This document shows positions 16,151-57,071 of a stretch of DNA of 64,000 nucleotides, piece by piece (the stretch's first letter is position 1; each line of letters opens with the position of its first letter). This DNA comes from Mizuhopecten yessoensis (lineage: Eukaryota). The notes below the pieces were generated by a model, which searched no databases, had not been told where the DNA came from, and saw only the letters and a list, made by a program, of their open reading frames with translations. The DNA lies in assembly GCF_002113885.1 (NCBI RefSeq), contig NW_018408895.1, positions 657,724-721,723 of the forward strand, read 5' to 3'. Position numbers and translations under genes: made by a program.

Positions 16151-16195
16151 CTGACTTCCACCTGTTGAATTCCACTGTCTACCATTATTTTAGAG

Positions 16196-22335: not shown

Positions 22336-23466
22336 TTACTCAGACAGATATGGTTTTGGCTGATCAAGAAATGCCTGGATGTTATTTGCTACCTTTTGGA
22401 GTACAACCTTATCTTTGCTGGAAAACAGATTGACCCCGTCATGAAAGTACAACGGGAGAATGCCCCTCTGGATATAGCCGAGCAGACGATACGTCATTGA
22501 CTTCACGCGAGCCGCCAGGAGTTCCTGCTGCCATTCGGTGTCAAAGGGATGATCCTCACACTCCCAGAACAGCACGTTCTTTAGGTGGTATGATGTCAAT
22601 TCTGACTTCGAACCTGGTGGACACCATACGTCTTCTTTCAGTCGCTTCATGATCCGTTGACTTTTCTTTCTACATGTTCCTTTAATGTCAATTCCATCCA
22701 GAAGTTCCTTTTCACATGCGGCGAAAGAAAGTGTCCAGTAGAATGGTTCTTTTGCAATTTCATTCACACCTACTTTTCTTATGGCTGACCTCTTTTGCTG
22801 CGAAGGCCAGGTACTGTTCGATCTAGGCCAGTGAAATTCGGGTTTAAACTCCAGCTGAGATTCGATCATAGGGCAAAGATCAATGCTGATTGGGTAGTGA
22901 ATGTCCGGGAATTTCACAGACAGGGTAGTAGCAGGAGAACTCGATATCCTGTCTGTTGTTATCAGGTTTCTGAATTTTGGCTGATTAACTGCCTCGCCAA
23001 CAAGTGACTTGAACCACCTCTTTACCTTGATTGGAACTATGTCATCATCGAATGTCATACTAGCAACTCCGTCGTTAAGTCCGTCAGCCTCCCATTGCTT
23101 CTTCAAGTATCCAATTTTAGTAAAAGACTGACCAACCGGGGGATCCGGTAACGCGTATCCTTTTTTCTCCACCACTTTATCCCCAGTGTTGTTAAATCCA
23201 TAGTATCTTGTTTTCCCAGGTGCCCAGACCAGTTTACCGACATCAACGATGACGTTGTAGTCAAATTCATCCGCTTTTTTCACCTTCAGGTGAGTGTTAT
23301 AACTGCCTACCTTGAGGGGCTGTATCAGGAAGCGTCTGTCCCGGGAATTAACGTATCTCAAAATCTCATCCACAAGAGGAAGCACTTTCGCAACGCTCCT
23401 TTTAGTTTCATCTCCTTTCATCAATACTTTTTTATCACAGTACCTGTTCAGGGTATTGTTGTCCAT
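22336..23466 (-). CDS. cGAS-like receptor (cGLR; Mab21/cGAS nucleotidyltransferase), copy 1, intact, 376 aa
   Basis: Active-site motif GSYNTHLKVKKADEFDY, SSPATTL, third acidic residue in ISIDLCP, WTLSFAACEKELL, LTSYHLKNVLFW and PLYFHDGVNLF. It has no vertebrate zinc-ribbon insertion. Confidence 0.93.
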   Translation of the reverse strand: MDNNTLNRYCDKKVLMKGDETKRSVAKVLPLVDEILRYVNSRDRRFLIQPLKVGSYNTHLKVKKADEFDYNVIVDVGKLVWAPGKTRYYGFNNTGDKVVEKKGYALPDPPVGQSFTKIGYLKKQWEADGLNDGVASMTFDDDIVPIKVKRWFKSLVGEAVNQPKFRNLITTDRISSSPATTLSVKFPDIHYPISIDLCPMIESQLEFKPEFHWPRSNSTWPSQQKRSAIRKVGVNEIAKEPFYWTLSFAACEKELLDGIDIKGTCRKKSQRIMKRLKEDVWCPPGSKSELTSYHLKNVLFWECEDHPFDTEWQQELLAARVKSMTYRLLGYIQRGILPLYFHDGVNLFSSKDKVVLQKVANNIQAFLDQPKPYLSE

Positions 23467-23743
23467 TTTCTAGCCGTATGGAACTTTGTTAACAAGTTTA
23501 CTGGCGATGTCTATGTTGAGGACTGGCGTGTTTATCCCTATCATAGCATATATATACCAGTATGTGTCTGTATGCGTGGCTAATTCGGGACTTGGGAGTT
23601 ACGTTTTATTTTTGAAGTCATACCTCATACTTCTAGAACATTACATCACATGTTGTTGTTGTTGTGCAATGTAATTCTATATATGGACACCGTGCAATCA
23701 GTCGATATATTAACGTTTATATCTTACATTGAACCACGTGATG

Positions 23744-23793
23744 TTTATAGTACTTCCAGGAGAGACCCACATGAACTTTTGGTTTCGTTTTAC
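23744..23793 (-). promoter_or_regulatory. Putative promoter of cGLR copy 1: IRF-like site GTAAAACGAAACC about 30 bp upstream of TATAAA; same arrangement at 48004-48053 for copy 4
   Basis: The plus strand reads GGTTTCGTTTTAC (23781-23793) and TTTATA (23744-23749), oriented toward the ATG. Confidence 0.5.
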
Positions 23794-23920
23794 TGAATTT
23801 ATCCAAACATCGTGTTCTAGATTGAAAGGCGTACCCATTTGGTTTAAAAAAAAATACAATTTGAGAAAAGATCGATTGCGAAAAATAATCACTAAAAAAG
23901 CTAAACAAATTTGGCGAAGN

Positions 23921-24098
23921 AATGCGTGTCATAACTGCCCACTCTAAGGGGTTGTATCAGGAAGCGTCTGTCCCGGGAATTAACGTATCTCAGTATATCA
24001 TAAACAAGAGGAAGCACTTTCGCCACGTTCCTTTTAGTTTCATCTCGTTTCATCAATACCCTTTGATCACAGTAACAGTTCAGGGTATAGTTGTCCAT
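23921..24098 (-). pseudogene. cGLR copy 2, 5' fragment only, truncated at an assembly junction
   Basis: MDNYTLNCYCDQRVLMKRDETKR...RVGSYDTH ends at the n at 23920. It may be an incompletely assembled gene. Confidence 0.7.
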
Positions 24099-24656
24099 TT
24101 TCTAGCCGTATGGAACTGTGTTAACAAGTTTACCGGCGATGTCTATGTTGAGGACTGGCGTGTTTATCCCTATCATAGCAACTATATACCAGTATGTGTC
24201 TGTATGCGTGGCTAATTCGGGACTGGGGAGTTACGTTTTATTTTTGAAGTCATACCTCATACTTCTTGAACATAATAGAACACGTTGTTGTGCAATGTTA
24301 TTCTATATCTGGACGTCATGCAACCAGTCGATATATTACGTTAACATCTTACATTGAACCACGTGATGTTTATAATAATTCCAGGAAAGACTCACATGAA
24401 TCAATTTTGTTTCGTTTTTGACCAAGGAAGTTAACGATTTATCTGTTGGTGAATATCGGTTATGTATTGTTATTACTTAAGAATTTATCTCCTGGTAGAT
24501 TGTATACCTGTCATATCATGTGTTCATTTCATTCTTATATGTTGGAGCTCACGATGATTTTCTTCTTTTCTTTTCTTTGGTCCTTTATTCATAAAATAAT
24601 ATGCTAACACTGTAGTGTCAAGTAGAAGTATACTATGTGTATCTTTTCATATACAC

Positions 24657-25645
24657 ATTTTAGCTTGATCTAGTGACGACTAACTTTCGAGCTTTTTTTG
24701 TCTTATTATGACTTACAAAATTTTATGATGAGATAAGAATAAGAATAAATTTGTTCGGAAATGGCCCGATCAGAGAGTTACTGGCAGAGTTAGGGGACTT
24801 TGACATTTTAATTACTAATGGTAATTACTAATTACGGGAATTGAGATTGTGAGCACTTCAATAAAAGTAAATGGATTTCAACAAATTTTGCTATGCTGCT
24901 TTATATAAGAAGATCTCGACAAATTTGAAAATGGGCCCGATTAGACAGTAACTGGTAGAGTTATGGGACTTTGGTAATTACAATTGGACTTGAGCTTGTG
25001 AGCACAATAACTTGAGTAAATGTGAATGGATTTAGATGAATTTTGCTATGCAGCTTAATATCAAAAGTATCCCGGACGTGTTCAAAAATAAGCCGATCAT
25101 ACAGTCACTGGCAGAGTTACTGCCAATTGGAGAATACAAGATGGTCGATCCTTGGCTCTGATTTGCTGAGACGAAAAAAAATCGTCTTCTCAAGATGATC
25201 TGCAGCAATTCACTTCCGATCAAGTGTTCTTACTTTTTGTGCCGATCAGAAAATCCAAGGAGGTCACCCTGACCTCTCATTGGCTGAGATGTTTTTGACC
25301 TCTTCTCAAGTAAGGCTACACCGATTGACCTCTAACTTAGTAGAAGTGTTTCATATGAGGTTTCGACCAAGTTTCTTACTTTTCATACTGATTGTAAAAT
25401 TCCACATGGCCACCATGACCTGTGATTGGCTAGGACATTTACAACGTCCTCTGTACATAATCGGCCATCAAACGTATCATCTAATTAATCTATACAGCAT
25501 ATGTATGCTTGGCCTCTAGCTTAGTATGGGTGTATGCCCTATCTCCAAAGTAACTATGTGCAAATTAAAAAAAAAAAAGAACATGCTGCAATTTGAGTAC
25601 TTCAGAATTTACTCAGGTGACCGTTTCGGCATATGGGCCTTTTGT
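24657..25645 (+). mobile_element. HINE/MITE-like element with internal tandem repeats; partial paralogs at about 26212-26547 and 33020-33586
   Basis: Starts with TTTTAGCT, has internal repeats (GGCCCGAT.AGA.AGT.ACTGG.AGAGTTA), and ends with CAGGTGACCG followed by a GGC...GCC hairpin. Confidence 0.6.
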
Positions 25646-28600
25646 TTTTTGTTAGCAGTGCTTAAAGGTTTAATGTTCCGGAACTGAATTTCTATCAATA
25701 ACTGTGTTTGGCAAATCTACTCTGATCATATACCTAAAACGAAAATGAAACCACCAGCTTTTCTCTGAATTCTAATGCTTTATTCAACATAATATGTTCG
25801 TGTAGAGCCACGACCTTCACCTTCCGAGCTCTTTATTACGACATAATTATCTGGTAGTAACATCTGGTAAATTGACGTAATTTTCGTGTAACACCTAGGA
25901 TAGTTAAACTCATTGGTGCAGGATATTGGCAGTGTAACTAACTTATACAAGAGTCTCAGCACGGTTCACTTGTTTATAGTATGTGGTTTTGTTCAGAGCT
26001 ATAATGCAACCCCGGTGTCAACAGCAACTATGATTAATGGGGGAACAATGCAACAAGATCTCGTACCTCTACACACAGTGACACAGGGAAAAATGCAAGC
26101 TAACTGACATCACGTAGTAAACGCCACAGATGCTTGTAATCAGATTGAAATGGATGTTAAATGGATTAATATAATTTGCAAAGGTTTTGCAGGCATAAAT
26201 TGATCATCAATNAGTAAGGCTACACTGATTGACCTCTAAATTAGTAGAAGTGTTCCTTATGAGGTTTCGACCAAGTTTTTTTTTTCCATGCTAATTGTAA
26301 AATACCAGATGGCCACCCTGGCCTGTGATTGGTTAGGACATTTACAACGTCCTCTGTACATAATCGGCCATCAAACGTATCATCTAATTCATCTATACAG
26401 CATGTATATGCCTGGTCTCCATGTTGATATTGGTGTATGCCTACTCTCCAAAGTAGCTATGTGCCAATTTAAAAAAAAAAAAAAAAAAAAAGCATGCTGC
26501 AATTTGAGTACTTCAGAATTTACTCAGGTGAAGGTTTAGGCCTCTTGTTATTTGTTAGCAGTGCCTAAAGGTTTAATATTTCGGAACTGATTTTCTGTTT
26601 ACATCAATAACTGTGTTTGGCGAATCTATTGTAATCATATACCTAAAACGAAAATGAACCCACCAGCTTTTCTCTGAACTCTAATGCTTTATTCAACATA
26701 ACATGTTCGTGTAGAGCCACGAACTTCACCTTCCGAGCCCCTGGTTGATGTCCCTGGTGAGTTGTTTGTTTGTGATCTCTTTATTACGACATAATTATCT
26801 GGTAGTAACATCTGGTAAATTGACGTAATTTTCGTGTAACAATTAGGATAATTAAACTCATTTGTGCAGGATATTGGCAGTGTAACTAACTTATACAAGC
26901 GTCACAGCACGTACACTTGTTTATAGTATGTGGCTTTGTTTATAATATGTGGCTTTGTTCAGAGCTGTAATGCAACACCGGTGTCAACAGCAGCTATGAT
27001 TTAATGGGGAAAACAATGCAACAAGAACCTCTACACAATGGGTTTCTTATTCCGGAACTGATTTTCTGTTTACATCTATAACTGTGTGTGACGAATCTAT
27101 TGTGATCATATACCTAACACCAGAATAATTCTGTCCTCTGTGCCCTGAAAATAAAATTAAGATGAAATCTCTGCTGAAGACCCTGTTGCTTGTCGTTTAC
27201 AACAATGAAATGGAACACAGCAGTTTACTCCCGGGTCTCCAAACATGCAAGACTTTGTTTTTAATTTTAACAATACTTAAATTCCAACTTGTAAACTCGA
27301 ATTCATCATGCTTATCTTATAACTTAGAAATAAACCTCCCTATTTGGCAAATTATAAGTAAATTTCTAAGAAAGCGGCTGACGTAGAAGTGTCTGTCATG
27401 GCCTTGATTTAAAGCTCAAGAGAGTATTCATGTGGTCACCAAATTGTATTTAAAGACAGTACATCGTCAATATATCTGAATGTGAAATTGAAGAACTTTG
27501 CTAAACTTTTGTAACGAGTCCTGATAAGTTCAACAATAAATTCAGCTTCATAAAAAAAAAAAACGGCCCGAAAAAGCGCACAGCTTGCCACCGAACTCAG
27601 GATATTGTCAACCTAGAACACAACCATTCTCACAATATCGTCATCAGTGTATTTCATTTTGGCCTGTGTTGTGCTTTTCACAAAAAAAGCTCTTAAATAT
27701 TTTACAACCAAATATTTATTCTGCAGTTCGCTTTTCTTGGAAAGAATGCTGTCATTATAGGAGAACTATAGGAGAGATAAGGCGTCCATACCGTTTGGTA
27801 CGAGGTATGTTCGTGTAAAGGTTCGAAATCCACATTCCATATATTCCACCATTGCGTTTACAGTGTCACAATACAACTCACTGTAATACTCGTTCACGAT
27901 GGCAGATTAACCAAAATTGATGACAGGTAAAGGAATATACTTGTATATAAACGCACTGGATTTAAATCGGAAGTTAAATAAGTAGTAATTTACACATCTT
28001 GCATATTAAAATGTTTTGTAATTCATGATAGCATGTACATTATTGCATTACCAACAATAATTCGCGATGTTCTTTAATAAAGTTACAGTGATATATATGC
28101 CAAGGACTGGCGTGTTTGTACATATCAGTTCACGTATATATGTGTGTGAATGTGTGTGTGGGACTAATTTTAGACTGAGCAGTTACGTTTTATTTTTGAA
28201 GTCATAGCTCATACTTCTTGAACATGATAGAACACGTTGTTGTGCCATGTGATTCTATATCTGGACATCGTGCAATCAGTCGATATTTTTACGTTGACAT
28301 TTAACATTGAACCATCATCTAAAACCAGAAATACCTTATTGTATACTACAAAAGATATTGTGGAGATATTTTGGGCACTAATTTATTCATAATCTATTAA
28401 CTTAGTATCTCCGAGAGTGCACTTCAATTGTCTTTACAGTCACGAGTTTAGTAGTTTTATAATAAATATCGTTGAAATAGCATCTTATTTCGAGTCGACA
28501 GCAATAGTCATCGATACTTGCAATGAAACACCAACAATTTGTCCTAGGCGTAATACAGATCTTGTTTCTTCCTTTTCGTCTAAAATAACATCCGTTTTCA

Positions 28601-28819
28601 GTCTTATCAACACGAGGTATTGAATTACCTTCTTATCTATATGTCACCATGAAGTAAACGGTAAAACACTACAGATTCCGCTTCATCAGTTATGACAACA
28701 ACAGTCAGCTCACTAAAAAACTATGTGAAGAAATGAACGTCATATATGATATGATTGTAAAGGTTTCCTCTCATGCGCTTTACATCTATATGAAGTATTT
28801 CATGAAATCTGTTATGTTA

Positions 28820-28891
28820 AGAGTGTAATAGGACAATAAAATTAAGTATGTAAAATCTTACATACTTAATTTTATTGTCCTATTACACTCT
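28820..28891. repeat. Perfect 34-bp-arm palindrome with a 4-nt loop; decayed paralog at about 43223-43289
   Basis: AGAGTGTAATAGGACAATAAAATTAAGTATGTAA-aatc-TTACATACTTAATTTTATTGTCCTATTACACTCT. Confidence 0.92.
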
Positions 28892-29254
28892 CAATAGAGA
28901 TCAATGTCACTTACAAGTTTAAGATTCGTTCAAATTGGGGTTTTCATGATGAAAAGAACAGTTCACAGCCGTTTCTGTTAGAATAGTGAAATCTATATAG
29001 TGAAAACCCATCAATCTTTAATGAATATTTTTACTTGACGATCGTATTTACAGGTTATTGGGTCACTTAATGGCTATATTGATAATCAACATATTGTGAT
29101 GCTTTTAATTTTAACAATACTTTACTTTCAAATTTTACGCATTTATCTTTACAAGCTTGTTGTTAATACTTATAACTCTTACCTTGTTTGGACACAATAC
29201 TATTATAGTCACACATCAACGATCAACAAAACGGTAGAAAAGTATCTTCTCATA

Positions 29255-29406
29255 GATAGGACACACTGGTATAATAGTTAGGACACAATACTATTATAGT
29301 TAGGAAACAACATTATTATAGTTAGGACACAACACTATTATAGTTAGAACACAATACTATTATAGTTAGGACACAATACTATTATAGTTAGGACACAAAA
29401 CTATTA
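29255..29406 (+). repeat. 22-bp minisatellite (TAGTTAGGACACAATACTATTA), about 7 copies; paralog at 43676-43810
   Basis: Head-to-tail copies with no spacers. Confidence 0.92.
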
Positions 29407-29518
29407 ACACATCAACGATCAACAAAACGGTAGACGAGTTTGAATGAAAAACCATAACGAAACAAAGTAAACAATTCGTTATCTTGAAAAAAAAAAAAAA
29501 AAATGTTTTCCAATCAAT

Positions 29519-30743
29519 GACAGATATGGTTTTGGCTGATCAAGAAATGCCTGGATGTTATTTGCTACCTTTTGGAGTACAACCTTATCTTTGCTGGAAA
29601 GCAGATTGACCCCGTCATGGAAGTACAACGGGAAAATGCCCCTCTGGATATAGACGAGCAGACGATACGTCATTGACTTCACGCGAGCCGCCAGGAGTTC
29701 CTGCTGCCATTCAGTTTCAGAAGGATGATCCTCACACTCCCAGAAATGCACGTTCTTCAGGTGGTATGATGTCAGTTCTGACTTCAAACCTGGTGGACAC
29801 CATACGTCGTCTTTCAGTCGCTTCATGATGCGTTGACTTTTCTTTCTACATGTACCTTCAATGTCAATTCCATCCAGAAGTTCCTTTTCACATGCGGCGA
29901 AAGAAAGTGTCCAGTAGAATGGTTCTTTTGCTATGTCATTAACACCTATTTTCTTTATGGCTGACCTCTTCTGCTTCGAAGGCCAGTCAATGTTCGGTCT
30001 AGGCCAGTGAAATTCGGGTTCAAATTCTACCTGAGATTCGATCATAGGGCAAAGATCAATGCTGATTGGGTAGTCAATGTCCGGGAATTTCACAGACAGG
30101 GTAGTAGCAGGAGAACTCGATATCTTGTCTGTTTCTTAACTGCCTCGCCAACAAGTGACTTGAACCGACTCTACCTTGATTGGAACTATGTCATCATCGA
30201 ATGTCATACTAGCAACTCCGTCGTGAAGTCCGTCAGCCTCCCATTGCTTCTTCAAGCTCTCATTTTGAGTAAAATACTGACCAACCGGGGGATCCGGTAA
30301 CGCGTATCCTTTTCTCTTCACCACTTTATCCCTGGTGTTGTTAAATCCGTTACGTCCGTCAGCCTCCCATTGCTTCTTCAGGCACCCAATTTTAGTAAAA
30401 GACTGCCCAACAGGGGTATCCGGTAACGCGTATCATTTTTTCTCCACACCTTTATTCCTGGTGTTGTTAAATCCATAGTATCTTGTTTTCCCAGGTACCC
30501 AGGACAGCTTACCGACATCAACGATGACGTTGTAGTCAAATTCATCCCCTTTTTCCACCTTCAGGTGCGTGTTATAACTGCCTACCTTGAGGGGCTGTAT
30601 CAGGAAGCGTCTATCCCGGGAATTAACGTATCTCAAAATCTCATCCACAAGAGGAAGCACTTTCGCAACGTTCCTTTTAGTTTCATCTCGTTTCATCAAT
30701 ACTTTTTTTTATCACAGTACCTGTTCAGGGTATTGCTGTCCAT
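29519..30743 (-). pseudogene. cGLR copy 3, pseudogene
   Basis: +2 frameshift in a homopolymer run near 30705, TGA at 30435-30433, a 126-bp internal duplication and deletions near 30135 and 30170. The stop codon and about 0.5 kb of 3' flank are deleted. Confidence 0.9.
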
Positions 30744-33700
30744 TTTCTAGCCGTATGGAACTGTGTTAACAAGTTTACCGGTGATGTATATGTTGATGAC
30801 TGGCGTGTTTGTCCTTATCAGAGCATATATATACCAGTATGTGTCTGTATGCGTGGCTAATTTGGGACTGGGGAGTTACGTTTTATTTTTGAATTCATTA
30901 ACATTTTTTAATGTACTTCTACATTGATTTATTGATTTAAACATATTTTATTGCAAATAAATATTTACAAAAGAATTGGACACAAGTTTTACCAACTTAT
31001 TAAAGTCCTTTTCTTCAAATACATGAATATAAACAATAACTTGATAAGGTAATTTACGCAATATACATTAATTATGTTTTTATATGGAAATGGAAAATAG
31101 AGACGAAGAAAAGAAGGAGAGCGAAACGAAGTAAAGGATAGTAACACAGATAGAGTAGATGAAAAATAGAGTGGAAGAAAAGACGGATAGAGTAATGAAG
31201 TAAATGATAGTAACACAGGTAGAGTCGGAGAAAAAAAAGAGTGATAGAGAGAGAAAGATGATCACATTCAGTCAAACCTGTTGCATTTGCTGATATAATT
31301 TTGGACAGATTTTGCAATTGAGGTATTTACATTAATGCTGAATTTAGGATCGCCATATAGGAGCAAGTCTAAAGTTAAATCATCACGAACAGGTTGAAGC
31401 TCTCTTATTAATAGATTACGATGCTGGGTGTATAAGGGACAGACACAAAGGAAGTGATAAGAGTCTTCACATGGATTACCGCATGCACATTCAGCTGTAT
31501 TTGATAAATTTGCTCTAAATANNNNNNNNNNNNNNNNNNNNNNNNNNNNNNNNNNNNNNNNATATTGTAAGTTACAATGGATATCGTAGATACAGTGTGT
31601 GTGCTAGTGTATTCATAAATATATAAATTTAATAACCCTTTAATTGCACATATTTTTCTTCTCATTTGTCACCAGGAATTAAAACGGTAAAACAATACAG
31701 ATTCCGCTACGTCACTTATGACAACAACGGTCGTATCACTAATTAACTACATATGTAGTGTATCTGACAAACTGGACGTCTTATATTTTACAATCATAAA
31801 ATATTTCCTCTCCTTCGGTTGGTTTTATACCATTTATATTAAGTGCTACTTGAATCTGTTCTGCTTTATTTTAAATATTTCATTCTATTGTCTTATCACT
31901 CCCTCGATATGATTCTCAATGTAAATAGCTTGGGTTTTGTTAAGTTAAAGTTTTTTGTTTCATGATAACAGTTGAAGTGTCACATTCAAAATCAGCCATT
32001 TCAGTAAAAATATAAAAATTAATACAAGTAGTCAAAACCCATCCGTCCTCTCTTAAATAATTTCATTTGACGATCGGACTTGCAGGTGATAGGAAAACTT
32101 AATGGTTATTGTAATTGCCAGCATGTTAAAATGTCTAAAAATAGGAGAGAATAAACAAAATACAAGATTGACAACAGACTAACAAGAAATACTTAAGGAA
32201 ATGGCAACGAAAAGAAAGAGTAGACAGGAAATATAAGTTACAGTGTTGCATTTGAACTTTGATTCCGTAACACTGAGTTCGTACAATGAATCGTGTTCCA
32301 CATGGGAACATGTACCAAATTACTACAAAACACATGTACCCCAATGATAGGATAAATTGAATACACTTGAAAATACATCTATCATTTACTAATATCTATA
32401 TCAATGAACACCTTATTGCATAATGAAAAGGAATTTTGAATAAGTACATTTCTTTTTATACTTAAATTCAACTCCGTCTCACCATTGATGTTCAAATTCG
32501 ATGAATGGACCTCACATTTACCGACGACAACATGAAACATCAACATATGCGATAAAACATCAGAACAGTGTTGTATGGTTTATAACGCTTTCTTCATTTC
32601 CCTTTTATCCAAAAACAACACTTGCCAAAGCAGTATCGACAAAATTGATATTACTAATCTTGTCATTAAAGAAAGCCAGAAATATTTTAATCTCATTTAT
32701 CATCAAGAACTTAACAGTAAAAACAACACAGATTCCGCTACGTGAGCATATCATAATAACGATCAACTTACTTAGAAACCCGATGACAAACTTGGCGACC
32801 CTTTTCTCTCCTTATCATATATATACCAGCCACCTCTCTCGTGAAATATGTATTTCGAGTTCAGATTTTGATGTCATTGATATTTTGCTGAATTATTTTC
32901 TAGTAGAGTTATAACAGCACACTTCAGTGTGGGGTATTCTTTATCATAACTGTCACAATGATTCGATAACTCTTCTTTTTTGTAGGACTATATTATGTAT
33001 TTATTTATCTGTTACTGCCAATTGGAGAACACAAGATGGCCGATCCTTGCCTCTGATTTGCTGAGAGGAGAAATGTTCGACACCTCAAGATTATCTGCAC
33101 CAATTCACTTCTTTATTTGTACAATTGTTCCTTATGAGGTTCAGAACAAATATTCTTACTGTTTGTGCCGATCATAAAATCAAAGATGGTCACCCTTAAC
33201 TTCTCATTGACTGGGATGGGTTTTTTTTATCTCTTCCCAAGAAAGGCTATACTGATTGACTTCTAACTTAGTAGAAGTGTTCCTAATGAGGTTTCGACCA
33301 AGTTTGTTACTTTTCATGCTGATTGTTGAATTCCGGATGGCCACCCTGGCCTGTGATTGGCTACGACATTTATAACGTCATCTGTACATAATCGGCCATC
33401 AGACGTACCATCTAATTCATCTATACAGCGTGTATACAGTGTGTATGCTAGATCTCTAGATTAATATGGGTGTATGCCCTCTCTCCAAAGTAAAGTTGTG
33501 CCAATTTAAAACAAAAAAGAACAATGCTGCAGTTTAAGTTCTTCAGAATTTACTCAGGTGACCGTTTAGGCCCATGGGCCTCTTGTTATTTGTTAGCAGT
33601 GCTTAAAGGTTTAAAATTCCGGAAGTGATTCTTTGTTTACATCAATAACTGTGTTTGGCGAATCTACTGTGATCATATACCTAAAACGAAAATGAAACCA

Positions 33701-42995: not shown

Positions 42996-44344
42996 TCAGT
43001 CTTATCAACACGAGGAATTGAAATACCTTCTTATTATTATGTCAACATGAAGTAAACAGTAAAACACTACAGATTCCGCTTCATCCCTTATGACATCAAC
43101 AATCAGCTCACTAACAAACTATGTCAAAAAATGGACGTCATATATGATATAATTGTAAAGTTTTCCTCGCATGCGCTTGAGTTTACATCTATATGAAGTA
43201 TTTCATGAAATCTGTTATGTTAAGAGTGTAATAGGACAATAAAATTAAGTATGTAAAATCTTACATATTTTATTGTCCTATTACACTCTCAATAGAGATC
43301 AATGTCACTTACAAGTTTAAGTTTCGTTCATATTGGGGTTTTCATGATGAAAAGAACAGTTCACAGCCGTTTCTGTTAGAATAGTGCAATCTATATACTG
43401 AAAACCCATCAATCTTTTCTGAATATTTTTATTTGACGATCGTATTTACAGGTGAGTGGGTCACTTAATAGCTATATTGATAATCACCATGGTGTGATGC
43501 TTTTAATTTTAACAATGCTTTACTTTCAAATTTTACGCATTTATCTTTGAAAGCTTGTTGTTAATACTAACAACTCTTACCTTGTTAGGACACAATACTA
43601 TTATAGTCACACATCAACGATCAACAAAACGGTAGAATAGTTTGTTGTTGATACTGATTACTCTTATCTTCTCATAGATAGGACACACTATTATTATAGT
43701 GAGGACACAATATTATTATAGTTAGGACACAATACTATTATAGTTAGGACACAATACTATTATAGTTAGGACACAATACTTTTATAGTTAGGATACAATA
43801 CTGTTATAGTCACACATCAACGATTAACAAAACGGTAGATGAGTTTGAATGAAAATCCATAACGAAACAAAGTTAACAATTCGTTATCTTAAAAAAAGAA
43901 TATTTATTCAAATGTTTTCCAATCAATGATACCATGTACAATAAAATATAGACAATTACCAATGCTTAAGAAAAGTACATTAACATTGCTAGTATTTTGA
44001 CTGCTATACTTTACACTAGTTATCTTATTTGTAATAACAGCAAATCATTAATACCAAAAATTTAAAATATATACATTGTTTTTCACTGTATCTTACATTA
44101 TGATCGTTATGTTATGTAGATTGTATTGCATTGTATCTAACATTATCTATACACATTCGTTGTATAAGTATTTACTTTACATGTTTACCGAATAAACTCT
44201 TGTCCTAGCGAACTACCATATAATGATTAAGCTAATACTATAACATATGCTTATATTAACTATCGTGAAACTGAATTACTTTGCTGCTCTATATAGATGT
44301 GAACACTATTTGTTCTAATAAATATTGTAACACTACTGTATGTT

Positions 44345-46322
44345 ACACTTTTTATTTATTTTTATTTTTATTCAATTTTAATTTTTTATAAAGAACACAA
44401 TTACACACAAAGCAACAATCATACATTACATTGATTACAATTCCCTTCACAACGGACACCTCTTTTAAAGGGACCAATTATATACTGTACACACATCAAC
44501 ATACACACACACAGGGGGGGGGGGGGGGGTGCAAACCTTTCTTNNNNNNNNNNNNNNNNNNNNNNNNNNNNNNNNNNNNNNNNNNNNNNNNNNNNNNNNN
44601 NNNNNNNNNNNNNNNNNNNNNNNNNNNNNNNNNNNNNNNNNNNNNNNNNNNNNNNNNNNNNNNNNNNNNNNNNNNNNNNNNNNNNNNNNNNNNNNNNNNN
44701 NNNNNNNNNNNNNNNNNNNNNNNNNNNNNNNNNNNNNNNNNNNNNNNNNNNNNNNNNNNNAGGATAAGATTATCCACTATCAAATCAGCATCCTTTGAAC
44801 TGAATTGTCCAAATATAAATTCCTGTTTGTCAAAATTCAAATCAATATTACTGGTTGCAAGCAATTGTTTTAGTTCTCTCAAAATTTCACATACTTTACC
44901 ACAATCCCAAAATAGATGTTCAATTGTTTCTGGAAATCTTTTACAAAAAGTACAAGTTGAATTTTGGTTAATTCCCATTTTTTGTAGGAGTGTGTTTGTA
45001 GTTAAGATTCTATGGTTAATTCGGTATTGAAGCCATCTTAATTTAGTACTACAGTAGTTTTAAAAGGACATGCATAAATCTTTTTCCATAATTTGTCCTG
45101 AATGTTAAAAACCGTAGACCATTTCCTTTGTGACGTGGGTTTTGTATCATTTTGGCATAAAACAGCATAAATATCTTGTGCCCCTTTAGTCTTCCATCAT
45201 ATAATTTTAAGATTTAAAGGTATATTAGGTAAACAAATACTCTTTTCTAAAGCAAAGATTTCTTGTTTACTATTTATAAACTGTTTTATAGCACTAATTG
45301 TACTGTGAAAAGTTAAAAAAATGGACCTTATATCATATCTATGTTGAAATTCTACAAAATTATAAAAAGAACCATCTTCTTTAATTACATCATATATAAA
45401 AAGCACTCCTTTTCTATACCACTCTTTACAGAAAACAGGCTTATTGTTAATTTGGATATTGTGATTATACCACAAAGGATTTTCACATATTTTTTCACTA
45501 TATATACTGGACGACACTATTGTTTGATACCATGCTTCTAGAACGTTTTTCCAAAATTTATTTTTACATTCTTCACATATAATTTTCAATTGATGAATTC
45601 CACAATTAGCTAAAGAGAACTTTTCAATGTAGTTTTCAGTAATGAAAGTCCAACTAGCATCTTCTTTATAGATCCTCCGTACCCGCGTTGCCTTTAATGC
45701 TGTTATGAAAGACTTTGAATGAATCATTTTCAAACCACCAGGTTCGTATGACTTAATTATAACATCACGTTTAACTTTATCAGTCTTTCCGCACCACAAT
45801 TTTTTTTATAATATGTTATTAACCTTTTTTACACAAGAGTCATGAGGGTTTGGAAGAGCTATAAAAAGATGATAAAATTGTGAAATTAGCAATGTTTTAA
45901 TAATGGTTATCTTACCTATTGGAGTTAGATTTCTTCTATCCCACGAACTTATGAGAGATTTAAGTTTAACAAGTTTCTTATCAAAGTTTAATTTAACTAC
46001 TCTATGTAAATCAACATCATATTCAATGCCTGGCAAATTATAACGTGTACTTTCCCACAAAAGATTGTGCTCTGTTGTATATTCATTATTACTATATTTT
46101 TCACTGCCTATCCAGATTGCCTGGGTCTTGGTGAAATTCATTATAAGACCTGAAATTCTGGCATAATAGTATCATCAGCAAACAGAGATAAAAGAATTTC
46201 TTTGTTATTTAAAACATTACCGCTAATATCTGAATTATTTCTTAATAGAATAGATAAAATTTCAGCACATAAGATAAAAACATATGAAGAAACAGGGTCC
46301 CCCTTGACGGCATCCACGCTCC
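44345..46322 (-). mobile_element. Tx1/L1-clade LINE ORF2 3' portion, degraded
   Basis: GCRQG/DPVSSYVFILCAEIL, LTPIGKITIIKTLLISQ and CTFCKRFPETIEHLFWDC; A-rich tail near 44345-44390. Related to the element at 5720-6862. Confidence 0.87.
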
Positions 46323-46607
46323 CTCCTATGTATCTTACATTATGATCGTTACATTATGTACATTGTATTGCATTGTACCTAACATTATCTATACACATTC
46401 GTTGTACTAGTATTTACTTTACATGTTCACCGAATAAACTCTTGTCCTAGCGAACTACGATATAATGATTAAGCTAATACTATAACATATGCTTATATTT
46501 ACTATCATGAAACTGAATTACTTTGCTGCTCTATAAAGATGCGAACACTATTTAAAAAAATAGTTGTTACATATCAAACAACTAATTTTTTTTAACAACT
46601 GCAAACA

Positions 46608-47726
46608 TTACTTAGACAGATATGGTTTTGGCTGATCGAGAAATGCCTGGATGTTGTTTGCTACCTTTTGGAGTACAACATTATCCTTGTTGGAAAGCAG
46701 ATTCACACCGGTATGGAAGTACAACGGGAAAATGCCCCTCTGGATATAGACGAGCAGACGATACGTCATTGACTTCACGCGAGTCGCCATGAGTTCCTGC
46801 TGCCATTCGGTGTCAAAAGGATGATCCTCACACTCCCAGAACAGCACGTTCTTCAGGTGGTATGATGTCAGTTCTGACTTCATACCTGGTGAACACCATA
46901 CGTCGTCTTTCAGTCGCTTCATGATCCGTTGACTTTTCTTTCTACATGTTCCTTTAATGTCAATTCCATCCAGAAGTTCCTTTTCACATGCGGCGAAAGA
47001 ATATGTCCAATAGAATGGTTCTTTTGCTATGTCATTCACACCTATTTTCTTTATGGTTGATCTCTTCTGCTTCGAAGGCCAGTCACTGTTCGGTCTAGGC
47101 CAGTGGAATTCGGATCTAAATTCTACCTGAGATTCGATCATAGGGCAAAGATCAATGCTGATTGGGTAGTGAATGTCCGGGAATTTCACAGACAGGGTAG
47201 TAGCAGGAGAACTCGATATCCTGTCTGTTGTAATCAGGTTTCTGTATTTTGGCTGATTAACTGCCTCGCCAACAAGAGCTTTGAATATCCTCTTTACCTT
47301 GATTGGAACTATGTCATCTTCACATGTCATGCTCTTCATTCCGTCAGCCTCCCATTGCTGTTTAAGGCGCCCAATTTCAATAAAACCCTGCCCAACAGGA
47401 GGATCCGGAAGCGCGTATCCTTTTTTCTCCACCACTTTATCCCTGGTGTTGTTAAATCCATAGTATCTTGTTTTCCCAGGTCCCCAAACCAGCTTACCGA
47501 CATCAACGATGACGTTGTAGTCAAATTCATCCGCTTTTTCCACCTTCAGCTGCGTGTTATAACTGCCTACCTTGAGGGGCTGTATCAGGAAGCGTCTGTC
47601 CCGGGAATGAACGTACCTCAAAATCTCATCCACAAGAGGAAGCACTTTCGTTACGTTCCTTTTAGTTTCATCTCGTTTCATCAATACTTTTTTATCACAG
47701 TACCTGTTCAGGGTATTGTTGTCCAT
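46608..47726 (-). CDS. cGLR copy 4, intact, 372 aa
   Basis: Same catalytic motifs (GSYNTQLKVEKADEFDY, ISIDLCP); 4-aa deletion after WEADG relative to copy 1. Confidence 0.93.
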   Translation of the reverse strand: MDNNTLNRYCDKKVLMKRDETKRNVTKVLPLVDEILRYVHSRDRRFLIQPLKVGSYNTQLKVEKADEFDYNVIVDVGKLVWGPGKTRYYGFNNTRDKVVEKKGYALPDPPVGQGFIEIGRLKQQWEADGMKSMTCEDDIVPIKVKRIFKALVGEAVNQPKYRNLITTDRISSSPATTLSVKFPDIHYPISIDLCPMIESQVEFRSEFHWPRPNSDWPSKQKRSTIKKIGVNDIAKEPFYWTYSFAACEKELLDGIDIKGTCRKKSQRIMKRLKDDVWCSPGMKSELTSYHLKNVLFWECEDHPFDTEWQQELMATRVKSMTYRLLVYIQRGIFPLYFHTGVNLLSNKDNVVLQKVANNIQAFLDQPKPYLSK

Positions 47727-52039: not shown

Positions 52040-53629
52040 ACGTTGACATTTAACATTGAACCACGTGATGTTTATAGTGCTTCCACGTAAGTCCCACACA
52101 CGAATCGACTTTTGATTCCGTTATACTGTTTTTATACAATGCACCGTCTTCTAGATGGAAACATGTGCCCTTTTGGTTTGAAAATAAAATACAGTTTGAA
52201 ATGTTTTGATTTAGCAAAAATAATCACTAGAAAATATGAAAAGTGAGGCACCTTTTCGAAAACCATCTTTCACATAAAAACGACACAACCATCATCTCAA
52301 ACCAGTAATACCTTATTGTATACTACAAAAGATATTGTGGAGATATTTTTGGTACTAGTTTATTTATAATATAAAAACTCAGTATCTCCGAAATTGCACT
52401 TCAATTGTCTTTACAGTCACGAATTTAACTCTGCCATTCAGTAATTTTTTAAATTAAAAACCGATTAAATGGCATCTTCTTTCAAGTCAACAGCAATAGT
52501 CATCGATACTTGCGATGAAACACAAATAATTGTTCCTAGGCTTAATACAGATCTGGAATTTTCCTTTTTAACTTAATTATTACTCGTTTTCAGTCTAATA
52601 ATTGAAGATGAGGATTTGTCATTTGTCACAGTAAAACACTACAGATTTGCTATCACGTATGACAACAATGGTCACCTCATTAACAAGCTACATGAAAAAT
52701 GGACGCCATATACTATATAATTGTAAAGTTCTCCTGCGCTCGAGTTTACATCTATATGCAGTATTACATGAAACTTGTTATGTTTGATTTTATATATTTA
52801 ACTCTATTGTCCTATTACACTCTTAATATTAAGTTTTGTTCAAAATTGTTTTTCATGACGAGAAGAACAGTTAAACCCGTCATAGTTAGAAAGAGCCGTT
52901 TCAATTAAAATAGAGAAATTTGTATAATTAAAACCCATCCATCCTTTATGAATAATTTTATTTGACGATCGTACTTACAGGTAATTGGGTTACTTAGTGG
53001 CTATTTAGATAGTCAATACGTTGAAATGCTTTTAATTTAAACAATGCTTTATTTTCACATTTTACACATTTATTTTTACTAATAGTTGATACTAATTACT
53101 CTTATCTTCTCATAGTTAGGACACAATATTATCATGGTCACACATCAACGATCAACAAAACGGTAGACAAGTTTGAATAAATAACCAAAACGAAACAAAG
53201 TAAACAATTCGTTATCTTAAAAAATAAATATTTAATCAAATGTTTTCCAATCAATGATACCATGTACACTTAAATTAAAACAATAACCAATGCTTAAGAA
53301 AAGTACATTAACATTACTAGTATTTTGACTGCTATATTTTACAACTAGTTATCTTATTTGAAAAAACAGCGACACTAAAACGTTAAAATATGTACAATGT
53401 ATTTCATTGTATCTAACATTATCTATATATATATTCGTTGTACAAGTATTTACTTTACATGTTTACCGAATCAACTCTTGTCCTAGCGAACTACCAGATA
53501 ATGATTAAGCTAATACTATAACATATGCTTATATCAACTATCATGAAACTGAATTACTTTGCTGCTCTATAACGATGTGAACACTATTTAAAAAAATAGT
53601 TGTTACATATCAAACAACAACTGCCAACA

Positions 53630-54759
53630 TTACTCAGACAGATATGGTTTTGGCTGTTCAAGAAATGCCTTGATGTTGTTAACTACCTTTTGGAGTACAG
53701 CCTTATCTTTGTTGGAAAACAGATTGACCCCGTCATGGAAGTACAGCGGGAGATTGCCCCTCTGGATATAGGCGAGCAGACGATACGTCATTGACTTCAC
53801 GCGAGCCGCCAGGAGTTCCTGCTGCCATTCGGTGTCAAAAGGATGATCCTCACACTCCCAGAACAGCACGTTCTTCAGGTGGTACGATGTCAGTTCTGAC
53901 TTCAAACCTGGTGGACACCATACGTCTTCTTTCAGTCGCTTTATGATCCGTTGACTTTTCTTTCAACATGTTCCTCCAATGTCAATTCCATCCAGAAGTT
54001 CATTTTCACATGCGGCAAAGGAAAGTGTCCAGTTGAATGGTTCTTTTGCAATTTCGTTCACACCTACTTTTCTTATGGCTGACCTCTTTTGCTGGGAAGG
54101 CCTTTTACTGTTCGGTCTAGGCCAGTGGCATTCAGGCCTTAATTCCAGCTGAGATTCGATCATAGGGCAAAGATCAATGCTGATTGGGTAGTCAATGTCC
54201 GGGAATTTCACAGACAGGGTAGTAGCAGGAGAACTTGATATCCTGTCTGTTGTTATCAGGTTTCTGTATTTTGGCTGATTAACTGCCTCGCCAACAAGCG
54301 ACTTGAACCACCTCTTTACCTTGATTGGAACTATGTCATCATCGAATGTCATACTAGCAACTCCGTCGTTAAGTCCTTCAGCTTCCCATTGCTTCTTCAA
54401 GCTCTCATATTGAGTAAAATACTTACCAACTGGGGTATCCGGTAACTCGTATCCTTTTTTCTCCACAGCTTTATCCCGGTGTTGTTAAATCCATAGTATC
54501 TTGTTTTCCCAGGTGCCCAGACCAGCTTACCGACATCAACGATGACGTTGTAGTCAAATTCTTCTGCTTTTTCCACCTTCAGGTGCGTGTTATAACTGCC
54601 TACCTTGAGGGGCTGTATCAGGAAGCGTCTGTCCCGGGAATGAACGTATCTCAAAATCTCATCCACAAGAGTAAGCACTTTCGCCACGTTCCTTTTAGTT
54701 TCATCTCGTTTCATCAATACTTTTTGATCACAGTAACAGTTCAGGATATAGTTGTCCAT
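53630..54759 (-). pseudogene. cGLR copy 5, full length with one frameshift and one nonsense codon
   Basis: 1-bp deletion near 54477 and AGA>TGA at 53965-53963; otherwise colinear with copy 1. Confidence 0.85.
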
Positions 54760-55811
54760 TTTCCAGCTGTATGGAGCTTTAACAAGTTGGATTTCGAGTT
54801 CAGACTTTGATGTTATTGATGTTTAGCTGAATTATTTTTCTATTGGAGCACACGAGTCCGGCGTCCTACCACTTGACTACCTCCTATTTCCCGTATTAGA
54901 CCCCGCCCATCTGCCCCCAGGGAAGCCAAACCCTCCCTGAATACAAACCTGAGGCCCCTTTGTCCAAAGACGTTCTGGAATAAATTGTTGTGGGGTATAA
55001 CTGACACAATGATTCGATAACTTTTGTTTTTTGTAGGTCTGTGTTACGTACATGTATTTATTTATCTGTTTCTTTCATAATATTGTCGTCACTGGTAACT
55101 GTTGTTGCTAAAATATAACCCAAAACCTGCTGCTGCATGGCCTATTCCGCCTACTATTATTAAAGAAATGATAAAACGCATTGTGAGCTTTGTTGATAAG
55201 GATATGGAGATACCTTGTGAGTTACCATCACCCTAGTGTCAAGTGATACATAAATTTTGTTTACTGGTTTTTTTTAACACAATATAGCTTATCGAGTGAC
55301 CGACTTTCGAGCCGTCAGCCGTCTTGTTTGTGTCATATCGTAAGAAAGTAGTACAATACTGCTGGATGTGGATACTTAATTTACCTTGGAAGATATCTTA
55401 TTTGGACAAATTATCACTAGTTACTTTAATTGTCAACAGTTTTTAAATGTTTCAATGTTCCTGAATTGATGTTCTGGTAATATCATTAACTTTGTATGTG
55501 ACCAAACTACTGTGATCATACGCCTAAAACGGAAATAAAACCCAGACATTCTCAGAACCAAAATGCTTTATTTAGTATTGAGGGAGCAATACTGATCTTG
55601 TAATTTATCAAATTATAAAAGATACAGTGCATATTATATAAGATGTTTTATATCTTATATAATAATATACAAGAGAGATATCTTATATATATGAGTTATC
55701 TTATACAATATATAAGATATTTCATTTATTTTATAAGAATAAATGTTGAGCTGGCTGCCAAAGAATCTACAACTCTTATTCCAAAGACCGATGTATGATC
55801 ACATCATTTGC

Positions 55812-55917
55812 GAAAGCGAAAGTAGTTGTTTCATCATGTTTTCCGAAACGAAAAGAAGCTAAAAATAAAAAGATAAGACAAGCAAATATAAAGGGAGAGA
55901 TCACACTCATGCGCAGT
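55812..55917 (+). promoter_or_regulatory. Putative IRF-responsive core promoter of cGLR copy 6
   Basis: GAAAGCGAAAGT (55812-55823) is a full match to the IRF-E consensus. Also GAAACGAAAA (55845-55854), TATAAAG (55887-55893) and an Inr-like GCAGTT near 55915. Confidence 0.6.
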
Positions 55918-55943
55918 TTAAACGTTGCACGAACAATACAATC

Positions 55944-57071
55944 ATGGATAACAAAATTCTGAACCAATATTATGAGGAAAATGTGAAAATGCTGCGTAAC
56001 GAAACGGAAAAAAATACAAAAGAGGTGTTACCACTGGTGGATGATATATTAAGGTATGTTCATCAGAGAGACAAACGATTCATGATACAAACAGTGAAGG
56101 TTGGAAGCTACCATACTCACCTCAAAGTGAAGCGGGCTGGCGAGTTTGACTTCAGTGTGGTCGTCGATGTGGGGAAACTGTCGTGGATAGCAAACAACAA
56201 TTCGAGGTTCTATGGTTTTGACAACGTCAATCGCAAAGTTGAGAGTAGCATATTACCTCTACCAAGCCCCCCTGCTGGTCAGTGTTTTACTCAAATCGGA
56301 AGCCTAAAAGCTAAGTGGGAATCTGAGGGACTTGAGGATGGAGGTGCAAGTTTGACATTCAACAACGATATAGTGCCAATTAAAGTAAAGAGAAGATTCA
56401 AAGCTCTTGTAAGCGAGGCTGTTAACCAACCCAAATTGAGAAGTCGTGTCACTACAGACCGGATTTCGGATTCACCGGCCATTACGCTCTCTGTAAAACT
56501 TCCGAATACTGCTTATCCGATCAGCATCGATTTATGTCCTATGATTGAATCTAAACTGGAATTCAGAAGTGACTTCAATTGGCCAAGACCGTTGGCCAAA
56601 TGGCCGTCTAGTGAAAAGATTTCCTGTATAAAGGATGTAGGAATACATGAAGTAGCCAAGTCGCCATTTTATTGGACACTGTCTTTCGCTGCATGTGAAA
56701 AGGAGCTTGTGGAGGGCATTGATGAAAATGGGACATGCAGAAGGAAAAGTCTTCGTGTCCTGAAGACTTTGAAAGAAAATATCTGGTGTAAACCAGGTGT
56801 CAAGAAGGGTCTGACATCATACCATCTGAAGAACGTGCTGTTCTGGGAGTGTGAGGATCATCCCTTTGACACCGAATGGCAGCAGGAGCTCCTGGAGACT
56901 CGCGTGAAGTCAATGACGTATCGTCTACTCGGCTATCTTCAGAGGGGAAATCTGTTGTTGTACTTCCATACCGGGGTTAATCTGCTCTCCAGCAAAGATA
57001 AAGGCGTGCTTCAGCAGGTAGCGAACATTATTAAGACATTTCTCGATCAGCCAAACCAATATTTGTGCTGA
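55944..57071 (+). CDS. cGLR copy 6, divergent paralog, intact, 375 aa, head-to-head with copy 5
   Basis: GSYHTHLKVKRAGEFDF, DSPAITL, ISIDLCP, WTLSFAACEKEL and LTSYHLKNVLFW. Confidence 0.93.
   Translation: MDNKILNQYYEENVKMLRNETEKNTKEVLPLVDDILRYVHQRDKRFMIQTVKVGSYHTHLKVKRAGEFDFSVVVDVGKLSWIANNNSRFYGFDNVNRKVESSILPLPSPPAGQCFTQIGSLKAKWESEGLEDGGASLTFNNDIVPIKVKRRFKALVSEAVNQPKLRSRVTTDRISDSPAITLSVKLPNTAYPISIDLCPMIESKLEFRSDFNWPRPLAKWPSSEKISCIKDVGIHEVAKSPFYWTLSFAACEKELVEGIDENGTCRRKSLRVLKTLKENIWCKPGVKKGLTSYHLKNVLFWECEDHPFDTEWQQELLETRVKSMTYRLLGYLQRGNLLLYFHTGVNLLSSKDKGVLQQVANIIKTFLDQPNQYLC

What the first reader, a model, noticed from the sequence alone, without database searches (positions are those of the whole stretch)
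22336..57071. Birth-and-death tandem cluster of six cGAS-like receptor copies
Seen: three intact ORFs of about 375 aa, two disabled copies and one fragment, embedded in kb-scale duplicated units. The intact copies keep GS...E-x-D and the third Asp, and lack the zinc thumb. Known: cGAS/cGLR enzymes make cyclic dinucleotides for STING, and the zinc-ribbon insertion is a vertebrate cGAS feature linked to dsDNA sensing. Inference: this is a lineage-specific, rapidly turning-over innate immune sensor locus whose ligands and products are unknown and may differ between paralogs.
Basis: partly seen in the sequence, partly recalled or inferred. Interest (0 to 1): 0.85.

Follow-up and report, generated by a model that had tools for sequence, protein, structure and literature searches.

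The report
Scallop cGAS-like receptor gene cluster
This stretch of the Yesso scallop genome holds a real tandem cluster of cGAS-like immune-sensor genes (three intact, two broken, one truncated at an assembly join), but the family and its expansion in bivalves are already catalogued, so it is a solid yet fairly ordinary finding.

Summary
The window (Mizuhopecten yessoensis) carries six Mab-21/cGLR loci. Three are intact intronless ORFs: c1 22336-23466(-), c3 46608-47726(-) and c5 55944-57071(+). Two are pseudogenes, c2 and c4. One is a 59-codon 5' fragment that stops at a single-N assembly join, so its fragment status cannot be trusted. Neither long gap lies inside a copy.

The intact proteins match Pfam Mab-21 plus Mab-21_C. 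They keep G54-S55, E67-x-D69 and D196, aligned to the cGAS catalytic residues, and they lack the cGAS zinc ribbon. Their best solved relative is the dsRNA-activated coral Sp-cGLR1. They are not developmental MAB21L1/2: that ortholog sits elsewhere in this genome and is only about 25% identical.

The locus lies between an EGLN-like gene and a DHHC gene, as in Pecten maximus and Ylistrum balloti. A/B-type copies group by species, while c5 has orthologs in the other two scallops. The 3' part of c5 looks homogenised with the A-type copies, so evolution here is birth-and-death plus gene conversion. Expression evidence is weak.

Li et al. 2023 already count 73 cGLRs in this species and list family members (OWF38395.1, probably a copy of this cluster; the Pecten orthologs). 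The scan has one other cGLR note on other DNA of this genome (s1-510947). Verdict: new member of a known kind; ligand and product untested.

The parts
22336..23466 (-). c1: intact intronless cGLR gene, 376 aa (A-type)
   Evidence: ORF. Pfam Mab-21 9.7e-18 and Mab-21_C 5.6e-21. AlphaFold model pLDDT 87.7.
23922..24098 (-). 5' fragment of a further A-type copy (codons 1-59) with its own upstream region; cut at the single-N join at 23920
   Evidence: tblastn, alignment. 23923-24418 repeats 23291-23791 at 89%. Most diverged copy, dS 0.31-0.39.
29519..30746 (-). c2: A-type pseudogene (+2 bp, 126-bp internal duplication, -2 bp, -25 bp, 3' end replaced)
42996..44311 (-). Solo copy of the 3' flank of the A-type unit without a gene; ends about 230 bp before gap 44544-44760
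   Evidence: Self-blast: 28598-29520 matches 42996-43929 at 89.7%, and 44087-44311 matches 46329-46553 at 94.7%. Sequence read.
46608..47726 (-). c3: intact intronless cGLR gene, 372 aa (A-type; 12-bp deletion relative to c1 at codon 131)
53630..54759 (-). c4: A-type pseudogene (1-bp deletion after 54478; TGA at 53963-53965)
   Evidence: A public gene model (OWF38398.1, 206 aa) covers part of it.
55944..57071 (+). c5: intact intronless cGLR gene, 375 aa (C-type), head-to-head with c4; orthologous to Pecten and Ylistrum C-type genes
   Evidence: Contigs of run X1 cover 55931-57195 without a difference.
56811..56980 (+). Tract of c5 (codons about 290-345) homogenised with the A-type copies
   Evidence: Third-position identity between c1 and c5 is 87% here against about 40% elsewhere. 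dS between c1 and c5 is 0.33 here, against 1.14 for the c5-Pecten C ortholog pair in the same codons.
3297..4427 (-). First exon of the EGLN-like gene (zf-MYND): left syntenic boundary of the locus
   Evidence: Pfam zf-MYND 2.5e-10. 80% nt match to the Pecten and Ylistrum neighbours.
60880..62025 (+). DHHC palmitoyltransferase ORF: right syntenic boundary of the locus
   Evidence: Pfam DHHC 1.4e-26. Pecten has a DHHC gene in the same position.

Best explanation
This is a genuine tandem cluster of cGAS-like receptor (cGLR) genes of the scallop Mizuhopecten yessoensis, at an old pectinid locus bracketed by an EGLN-like gene and a DHHC gene. It holds one conserved C-type gene (c5) and an array of A-type genes. 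The array has been duplicated in about 7-kb units in this lineage and has partly decayed: two copies intact, two pseudogenes, one truncated copy. Gene conversion occurs between copies.

Inferred mechanism. Each intact protein is a cytosolic pattern-recognition enzyme. A basic surface (pI about 9.2) binds a ligand, probably a double-stranded nucleic acid. Binding orders the GS activation loop. The E67/D69/D196 triad with two metal ions then joins two NTPs into a cyclic dinucleotide, which is read by one of the several STING proteins encoded in the genome.

Shown: gene structure, lesions, domain and fold, catalytic motif, synteny, paralog history, presence of STING.
Inferred: enzymatic activity, ligand, product, immune role.
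For: - Six loci and their lesions.
- Pfam Mab-21 plus Mab-21_C on all three ORFs, E 1e-16 to 1e-21.
- A profile of 33 homologs scores the dsRNA-activated Sp-cGLR1 (8gjy) at 170 bits over its full length, MAB21L1 at 115 bits and cGAS at about 100-108 bits.
- G54, E67, D69 and D196 are invariant, and S55 is kept in at least 90% of the 33 homologs. They align to cGAS GS / E-F-D / ISVD.
- The model (pLDDT 87.7) matches Sp-cGLR1 with TM 0.76/0.82 and cGAS with TM 0.75/0.82.
- Synteny DHHC - C - A - A - EGLN in Pecten, and the same for Ylistrum as far as the locus was fetched (C - A - A - EGLN).
- A-type copies cluster by species and C-type copies are orthologous.
- dN/dS is about 0.1 between species.
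- STING ligand-binding-domain exons lie on at least 4 contigs of this genome.
- Li et al. 2023 count 73 cGLRs and 5 STINGs in this species.
- Contigs of run X1 cover the whole c5 ORF and not the intergenic DNA. RNA reads carrying c1-type letters lie on the 3' part of the A-type sequence.
Against: - No biochemical or expression-induction data exist for any of these proteins.
- In two raw RNA-seq runs c5 had almost no reads, and X1 is only guessed to be RNA.
- The highest-scoring named vertebrate relative is MAB21L3 (lungfish, 248 bits). In frogs it has a developmental role (my own knowledge), and Li et al. describe Mab21L1/2/3 as lacking a predicted active site.
- Foldseek ranks MAB21L1 first by E-value, so the fold does not separate enzyme from non-enzyme.
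- The assembly is short-read, with many single-N joins, so copy number and the fragment are uncertain.
Confidence: 0.7

Rival explanations
1. The proteins are invertebrate counterparts of MAB21L3 and act as non-enzymatic, or at least non-immune, regulators, like the developmental Mab-21 proteins, rather than as pattern-recognition receptors.
For: NCBI names all pectinid and mytilid homologs 'mab-21-like 3'. Lungfish MAB21L3 is the best-scoring named vertebrate protein for the family profile, at 248 bits over its full length. Foldseek's best E-values go to MAB21L1. A mussel study lists a 'mab-21-like 3' transcript under 'neural development' (this is only an annotation transfer).
Against: In the tree, the vertebrate MAB21L3 clade and the MAB21L1/2 clade are each separate from the bivalve clade (quick tree, deep nodes weak). 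The true MAB21L1/2 ortholog of this genome (E 4.9e-199 to human MAB21L1) lacks GS, has E-F-E, and is about 25% identical to c1. The complete GS/E-x-D/D motif is invariant in 33 homologs. Tandem expansion with pseudogenes is unlike single-copy developmental genes. Lungfish MAB21L3 itself keeps the motif, so the name does not argue against catalysis.
Confidence: 0.15
2. Part of the apparent copy number is an assembly artefact: haplotypes or collapsed and mis-joined contigs of a short-read assembly, rather than separate loci.
For: Single-N joins sit exactly at repeat boundaries. 23920 lies between 23291-23791 and its 89% repeat 23923-24418. 26212 lies between 25309-26075 and 26213-27037. 57417 lies between two 97% identical 220-bp copies. 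Three small unplaced contigs carry further A-type pieces. RNA reads carry a mix of c1-like and c2/c3-like letters that matches no assembled copy.
Against: The copies differ by 6-12% in DNA (dS 0.09-0.18), carry different disabling lesions, and have different distal flanks. That is far beyond allelic divergence. The Pecten and Ylistrum assemblies (contigs of 53 Mb and 1.3 Mb) show the same locus with two A-type genes plus C-type genes. An independent DNA run holds contigs identical to c4 as well as contigs with paralog-type letters.
Confidence: 0.12

Closest known systems
Sp-cGLR1 of the coral Stylophora pistillata (PDB 8gjy; dsRNA-activated, makes 3'3'-cUA; Li et al. 2023)
   Same: Full-length alignment (residues 3-373) at 170 bits with the family profile. 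Same GS / E-F-D / D motif. No zinc ribbon. Similar length (376 aa). Best TM-score of the model (0.76/0.82).
   Different: Only about 26% identical. The loops after the catalytic strand differ. Ligand and product of the scallop proteins are unknown.
Vertebrate cGAS
   Same: Mab-21 nucleotidyltransferase fold plus C-terminal helical domain. GS, E-x-D and the third Asp align. TM 0.75-0.82.
   Different: About 20% identical. The scallop proteins have a 9-residue deletion where cGAS has the H(X5)CC(X6)C zinc ribbon, and they lack the His and the Cys pair. They have no long basic N-terminal tail. The residue aligned to the guanine-reading Arg of cGAS (W-R-L-S-F) is Thr in c1, c3 and c5 (W-T-L/Y-S-F). 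That this Arg reads guanine is from my own knowledge.
Bivalve cGLR expansions (Crassostrea, Dreissena, Mytilus; Li et al. 2023)
   Same: Same family. Li et al. count 73 cGLRs and 5 STINGs for M. yessoensis, and their domain table lists XP_021378478.1, OWF38395.1 and the Pecten C-type genes XP_033735596.1 and XP_033735598.1 with Mab-21 at residues 56-364.
   Different: The characterised oyster enzymes (Cg-cGLR1 and Cv-cGLR1; dsDNA, 2'3'-cUA) were not compared here. The one M. yessoensis protein in their screen (XP_021346622.1) is a different gene.
MAB21L3 (vertebrates)
   Same: Highest-scoring named vertebrate relative (lungfish, 248 bits, 34% identity). It also keeps GS / E-F-D / D.
   Different: It forms its own clade in the tree. 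It is not in a tandem array, as far as I know. Its biochemical function is unknown.
MAB21L1/MAB21L2 (developmental)
   Same: Same fold. Foldseek E 4.5e-21.
   Different: The scallop has its own ortholog on another contig, nearly identical to the human protein, without GS and with E-F-E. It is about 25% identical to c1.

Membership tests
cGLR (cGAS-like receptor) family | Mab-21 nucleotidyltransferase core followed by the Mab-21 C-terminal helical domain | tested here: met
   Pfam PF03281 and PF20266 are above the curated cut-offs on c1, c3 and c5. The model matches Sp-cGLR1 and cGAS with TM 0.75-0.82.
cGLR (cGAS-like receptor) family | Complete active site: G-S loop, [E/D]-h-[E/D] and a third acidic residue | tested here: met
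   G54-S55, E67-F-D69 and D196 align to cGAS GS, E-F-D and ISVD. They are invariant or nearly so in 33 homologs and present in c1, c3 and c5.
cGLR (cGAS-like receptor) family | Ligand-dependent synthesis of a cyclic di- or oligonucleotide | not testable with these tools
   Needs recombinant protein and TLC or LC-MS.
cGLR (cGAS-like receptor) family | A STING-type receptor in the same genome | tested here: met
   PF15009 exons above the cut-off on contigs C76433, C230 (two), C3755 and C1714. Li et al. count 5 STINGs.
Vertebrate-type cGAS | Zinc-ribbon insertion H(X5)CC(X6)C | tested here: not met
   There is a 9-residue gap at that site. c1 reads SFAACEKELLDGIDIKGTCRKK, without the His and the Cys pair.
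MAB21L1/2 developmental proteins | Near-identity to vertebrate MAB21L1/2; no GS loop; E-F-E | tested here: not met
   The genome's real ortholog (L003) scores 4.9e-199 to human MAB21L1. c1 is about 25% identical to it and differs at the motif. The two lie in separate clades.
MAB21L3 orthology group | Groups with vertebrate MAB21L3 to the exclusion of other Mab-21 clades | tested here: inconclusive
   It is the best-scoring named vertebrate relative. However, the quick tree puts vertebrate MAB21L3 in its own starred clade, the deep nodes are weak, and no cGAS outgroup was available.

The most novel reading that the evidence does not exclude
The bivalve A/C-type genes and vertebrate MAB21L3 belong to one old clade of catalytically competent Mab-21 enzymes. 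Lungfish MAB21L3 keeps GS / E-F-D / D. If so, the orphan MAB21L3 would be a signalling nucleotidyltransferase, and the scallop A-type and C-type paralogs would use different ligands or make different cyclic dinucleotides for the several scallop STINGs.
Probability: 0.15. Interest if true: 0.6.

Novelty: new member of a known kind. Interest (0 to 1): 0.3.

Why it matters
Bivalves rely on innate immunity alone and have very large cGLR and STING repertoires, of which only a few enzymes have a known ligand and product. This locus is a compact, well-delimited case. It has one conserved gene (c5), two young intact paralogs (c1, c3) that differ mostly in residues 86-150, and dated pseudogenes, with orthologous loci in two other scallops. 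That makes it a convenient set for asking whether recent cGLR duplicates change ligand or product. It does not change what is known about the family.

Tried and rejected
- Positive selection on the 'hypervariable patch' (codons 86-150): dS is raised together with dN (c1-c3 dN 0.106, dS 0.359, ratio 0.30). No support for positive selection; it looks more like a mosaic or converted segment.
- Pure independent duplication in each species against concerted evolution: not separable. Ylistrum units are 97.7% identical over 6.4 kb, which points to a recent duplication. Pecten coding sequences (dS 0.04) are more alike than their flanks (88-94%), which hints at conversion.
- ISRE-like promoter: one GAAAGCGAAAGT at 55812-55823, with 0.66 expected by chance in the window. 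It is not conserved at the aligned place in Pecten. Left as a hint.
- Pfam on seven other ORFs inside the array gave nothing.
- Paper searches for MAB21L3 with cGLR and for 8GJY found nothing useful.
- The careful tree did not finish in time; the quick tree was used.
- Raw RNA runs X20 and X23 gave almost no reads on c5 and none identical to c4. This is not evidence of silence.
- Continuity across gap 44544-44760 could not be tested. No gap letters were looked up.
Full report
**Origin of the window**

The window is G000:C5568:657724-721723. Two public gene models on the same 1.24-Mb contig are named 'Protein mab-21-like 3 [Mizuhopecten yessoensis]'. The organism is therefore the Yesso scallop. 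The assembly is short-read, with many single-N joins.

**Observation**

The ORF listing gives three long ORFs: 22336-23466(-), 376 aa; 46608-47726(-), 372 aa; 55944-57071(+), 375 aa. tblastn of these against the window finds six loci and no more. I call them c1, fragment, c2, c3, c4 and c5.

An alignment of the six, mapped back to window coordinates, shows the lesions.
- c2 (29519-30746) has a 2-bp insertion at 30709-30710, a 126-bp internal tandem duplication at 30333-30458, a 2-bp deletion after 30173, a 25-bp deletion after 30136, and a replaced 3' end.
- c4 (53630-54759) has a 1-bp deletion after 54478 and a TGA at 53963-53965.
- The fragment (23922-24098, codons 1-59, with its own upstream region to about 24418) stops exactly at the single N at 23920.

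The window's self-comparison confirms kb-scale repeated units around the copies at 70-95% identity. It also shows that the repeated zone starts at about 17.3 kb, before the finding's start.

**Gaps**

Neither long gap lies in a copy.
- 31522-31561 is 776 bp upstream of the c2 start. Sequence to its left (30705-30898) and right (31562-31651, 31648-32076) matches the ungapped c3 unit in the same order and orientation. This fits continuity but does not prove it.
- 44544-44760 is 1.85 kb downstream of the c3 stop. To its left lies a gene-less copy of the A-type 3' flank (42996-44311), followed by about 230 bp of AT-rich sequence ending in a poly-G run at the gap edge. To its right lies AT-rich, transposon-like sequence. 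Continuity there could not be tested. I looked up no gap letters.

Single-N joins sit at repeat boundaries (23920, 26212, 57417), and three small unplaced contigs carry further A-type pieces. The number of copies is therefore a minimum estimate, and the 'fragment' may be a cut whole copy or a mis-join.

**What the genes are**

All three ORFs match Pfam Mab-21 and Mab-21_C well above the cut-offs.

Against solved structures, c1 matches Sp-cGLR1 of Stylophora pistillata (8gjy) over its full length (1.6e-24), then MAB21L1, then cGAS. With a profile of 33 homologs the scores are Sp-cGLR1 170 bits, MAB21L1 115 bits and cGAS about 100-108 bits.

In that alignment the family's G-S, E-F-D and 'ISVD' align with the cGAS GS loop and catalytic acids. 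The cGAS zinc-ribbon segment is replaced by a 9-residue gap, without the His and the Cys pair. G54, E67, D69 and D196 are invariant among the 33 homologs and present in c1, c3 and c5.

An AlphaFold model of c1 (pLDDT 87.7) matches Sp-cGLR1 (TM 0.76/0.82), cGAS (0.75/0.82) and MAB21L1 (0.67-0.72). The fold alone does not separate these.

**Not developmental MAB21L1/2**

The genome has a separate ORF on contig C1613 that matches human MAB21L1 at 4.9e-199. That ORF reads 'ANGRFEG...EFE' where c1 reads 'VGSY...EFD'.

The best-scoring named vertebrate relative of the scallop family is lungfish MAB21L3 (248 bits), which also keeps the motif. In a quick tree of 42 proteins the bivalve clade, the vertebrate MAB21L3 clade and the MAB21L1/2 clade are separate. 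The deep nodes are weak, and no cGAS sequence was available as an outgroup. Orthology to MAB21L3 stays open.

**Locus history**

Pecten maximus and Ylistrum balloti carry the same locus. The order in Pecten is DHHC - C2 - C - A1 - A2 - EGLN-like. Ylistrum shows C - A1 - A2 - EGLN-like, as far as the locus was fetched. In the window the EGLN-like first exon is at 3297-4427(-) and the DHHC ORF is at 60880-62025(+). LINE fragments at 6-17 kb widen the left side.

A DNA tree puts c5 with the Pecten C gene (100/100). The A-type copies group by species: Mizuhopecten 94/100, Pecten 100/99, Ylistrum 100/100.

Divergence:
- dS between species is about 1.
- dS within species is 0.17 (c1-c3) and 0.04 (Pecten and Ylistrum pairs).
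- dN/dS is about 0.1 between species and 0.3-0.4 between paralogs.
- Pairs that include pseudogenes reach 0.4-0.6.

The Ylistrum units are 97.7% identical over 6.4 kb. The Pecten flanks are 88-94% identical, while the Pecten coding sequences are closer than that.

In codons about 290-345, c5 is much closer to c1 and c3 (third positions 84-87% identical, dS 0.33) than to its Pecten ortholog (62%, dS 1.14). Pecten shows the same effect between its A and C genes. This is the signature of gene conversion between inverted paralogs. The history is therefore duplication and decay of A-type units, on an old two-type locus, with conversion on top.

**Function**

The intact proteins have a pI of 9.0-9.3. 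STING ligand-binding-domain exons occur on at least four contigs of the genome. Li et al. 2023 count 73 cGLRs and 5 STINGs for this species and showed that bivalve and coral cGLRs respond to dsDNA or dsRNA and make 2'3'-cUA, 3'3'-cUA or 2'3'-cGAMP.

I infer a ligand-activated cyclic-dinucleotide synthase feeding STING. Ligand and product are not known. The residue aligned to the guanine-reading Arg of cGAS is Thr in c1 (the role of that Arg is from my own knowledge). This is a weak hint that the product may not be 2'3'-cGAMP.

**Expression**

- Contigs of run X1 (guessed to be RNA) cover 55931-57195, that is the whole of c5, with no differences. They do not cover the intergenic DNA, which a DNA run does cover.
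- Two raw RNA-seq runs show almost nothing on c5.
- Reads on the 3' part of c4 carry letters of c1 at 10 of 12 sites. They therefore come from a c1-like copy, not from c4.

This is weak evidence that c5 and a c1-like copy are transcribed at low level.

**Novelty**

Li et al.'s domain table lists XP_021378478.1 and OWF38395.1 (M. yessoensis, Mab-21 at residues 56-364) next to the Pecten C-type genes XP_033735596.1 and XP_033735598.1. OWF38398.1 and OWF38399.1 are partial models of c4 and c5. By its number and domain span, OWF38395.1 is probably a copy of this cluster; this is an inference.

The family and its bivalve expansion are known. What is added here is the anatomy and history of one locus.

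**Steps not taken**

Noticed in passing
57197-57633: Two 220-bp copies, 97% identical, lie head to tail around the single N at 57417. This looks like a gap-closing artefact of the assembly.
   Followed up: no
25309-27037: About 800 bp on either side of the single N at 26212 repeat each other at 82%. Another repeat boundary that coincides with an assembly join.
   Followed up: no
6102-17089 (+): Broken LINE-type retrotransposon pieces (RVT_1, endonuclease, zf-RVT) with many single-N joins and an 831-N gap at 10884-11714. They lie between the EGLN-like gene and the cGLR array and account for much of the extra spacing compared with Pecten and Ylistrum.
   Followed up: partly
60880-62025 (+): An intronless DHHC palmitoyltransferase ORF (381 aa) next to c5. 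Pecten has a DHHC gene in the same position, so the neighbourhood is conserved. No functional link was tested.
   Followed up: partly
L004:1027-2400 (G000:C5582:57526-58899): A more distant paralog (457 aa, 40% identical to c1) with intact GS / E-F-D / D. It has an insertion of about 66 residues at the same place as the variable patch of the cluster's copies (after the catalytic strand).
   Followed up: partly
L003:898-2043 (G000:C1613): The scallop's true MAB21L1/2 ortholog, nearly identical to human MAB21L1 (E 4.9e-199).
   Followed up: yes
55812-55860: An ISRE-like GAAAGCGAAAGT and a nearby GAAACGAAAAG lie about 90-130 bp upstream of the c5 ATG. One match against 0.66 expected in the window, and not conserved at the aligned site in Pecten.
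   Followed up: partly
44761-46300 (-): AT-rich stretch with 111-aa and 200-aa ORFs and no Pfam match, inserted in the 3' flank of c3. It is probably a decayed transposon. The left edge of gap 44544 ends in a poly-G run.
   Followed up: partly
G000 contigs C45080, C41369, C55793: Small unplaced contigs carrying A-type pieces (82-88% identical to c1). They are either further copies or other haplotypes. They were not examined, in keeping with the rule on gaps.
   Followed up: no
L005:10001-11137 and L001:480-1601: Pecten maximus has two C-type genes that are sisters in the tree, a Pecten-specific duplication. Mizuhopecten has one C-type gene in the window.
   Followed up: partly
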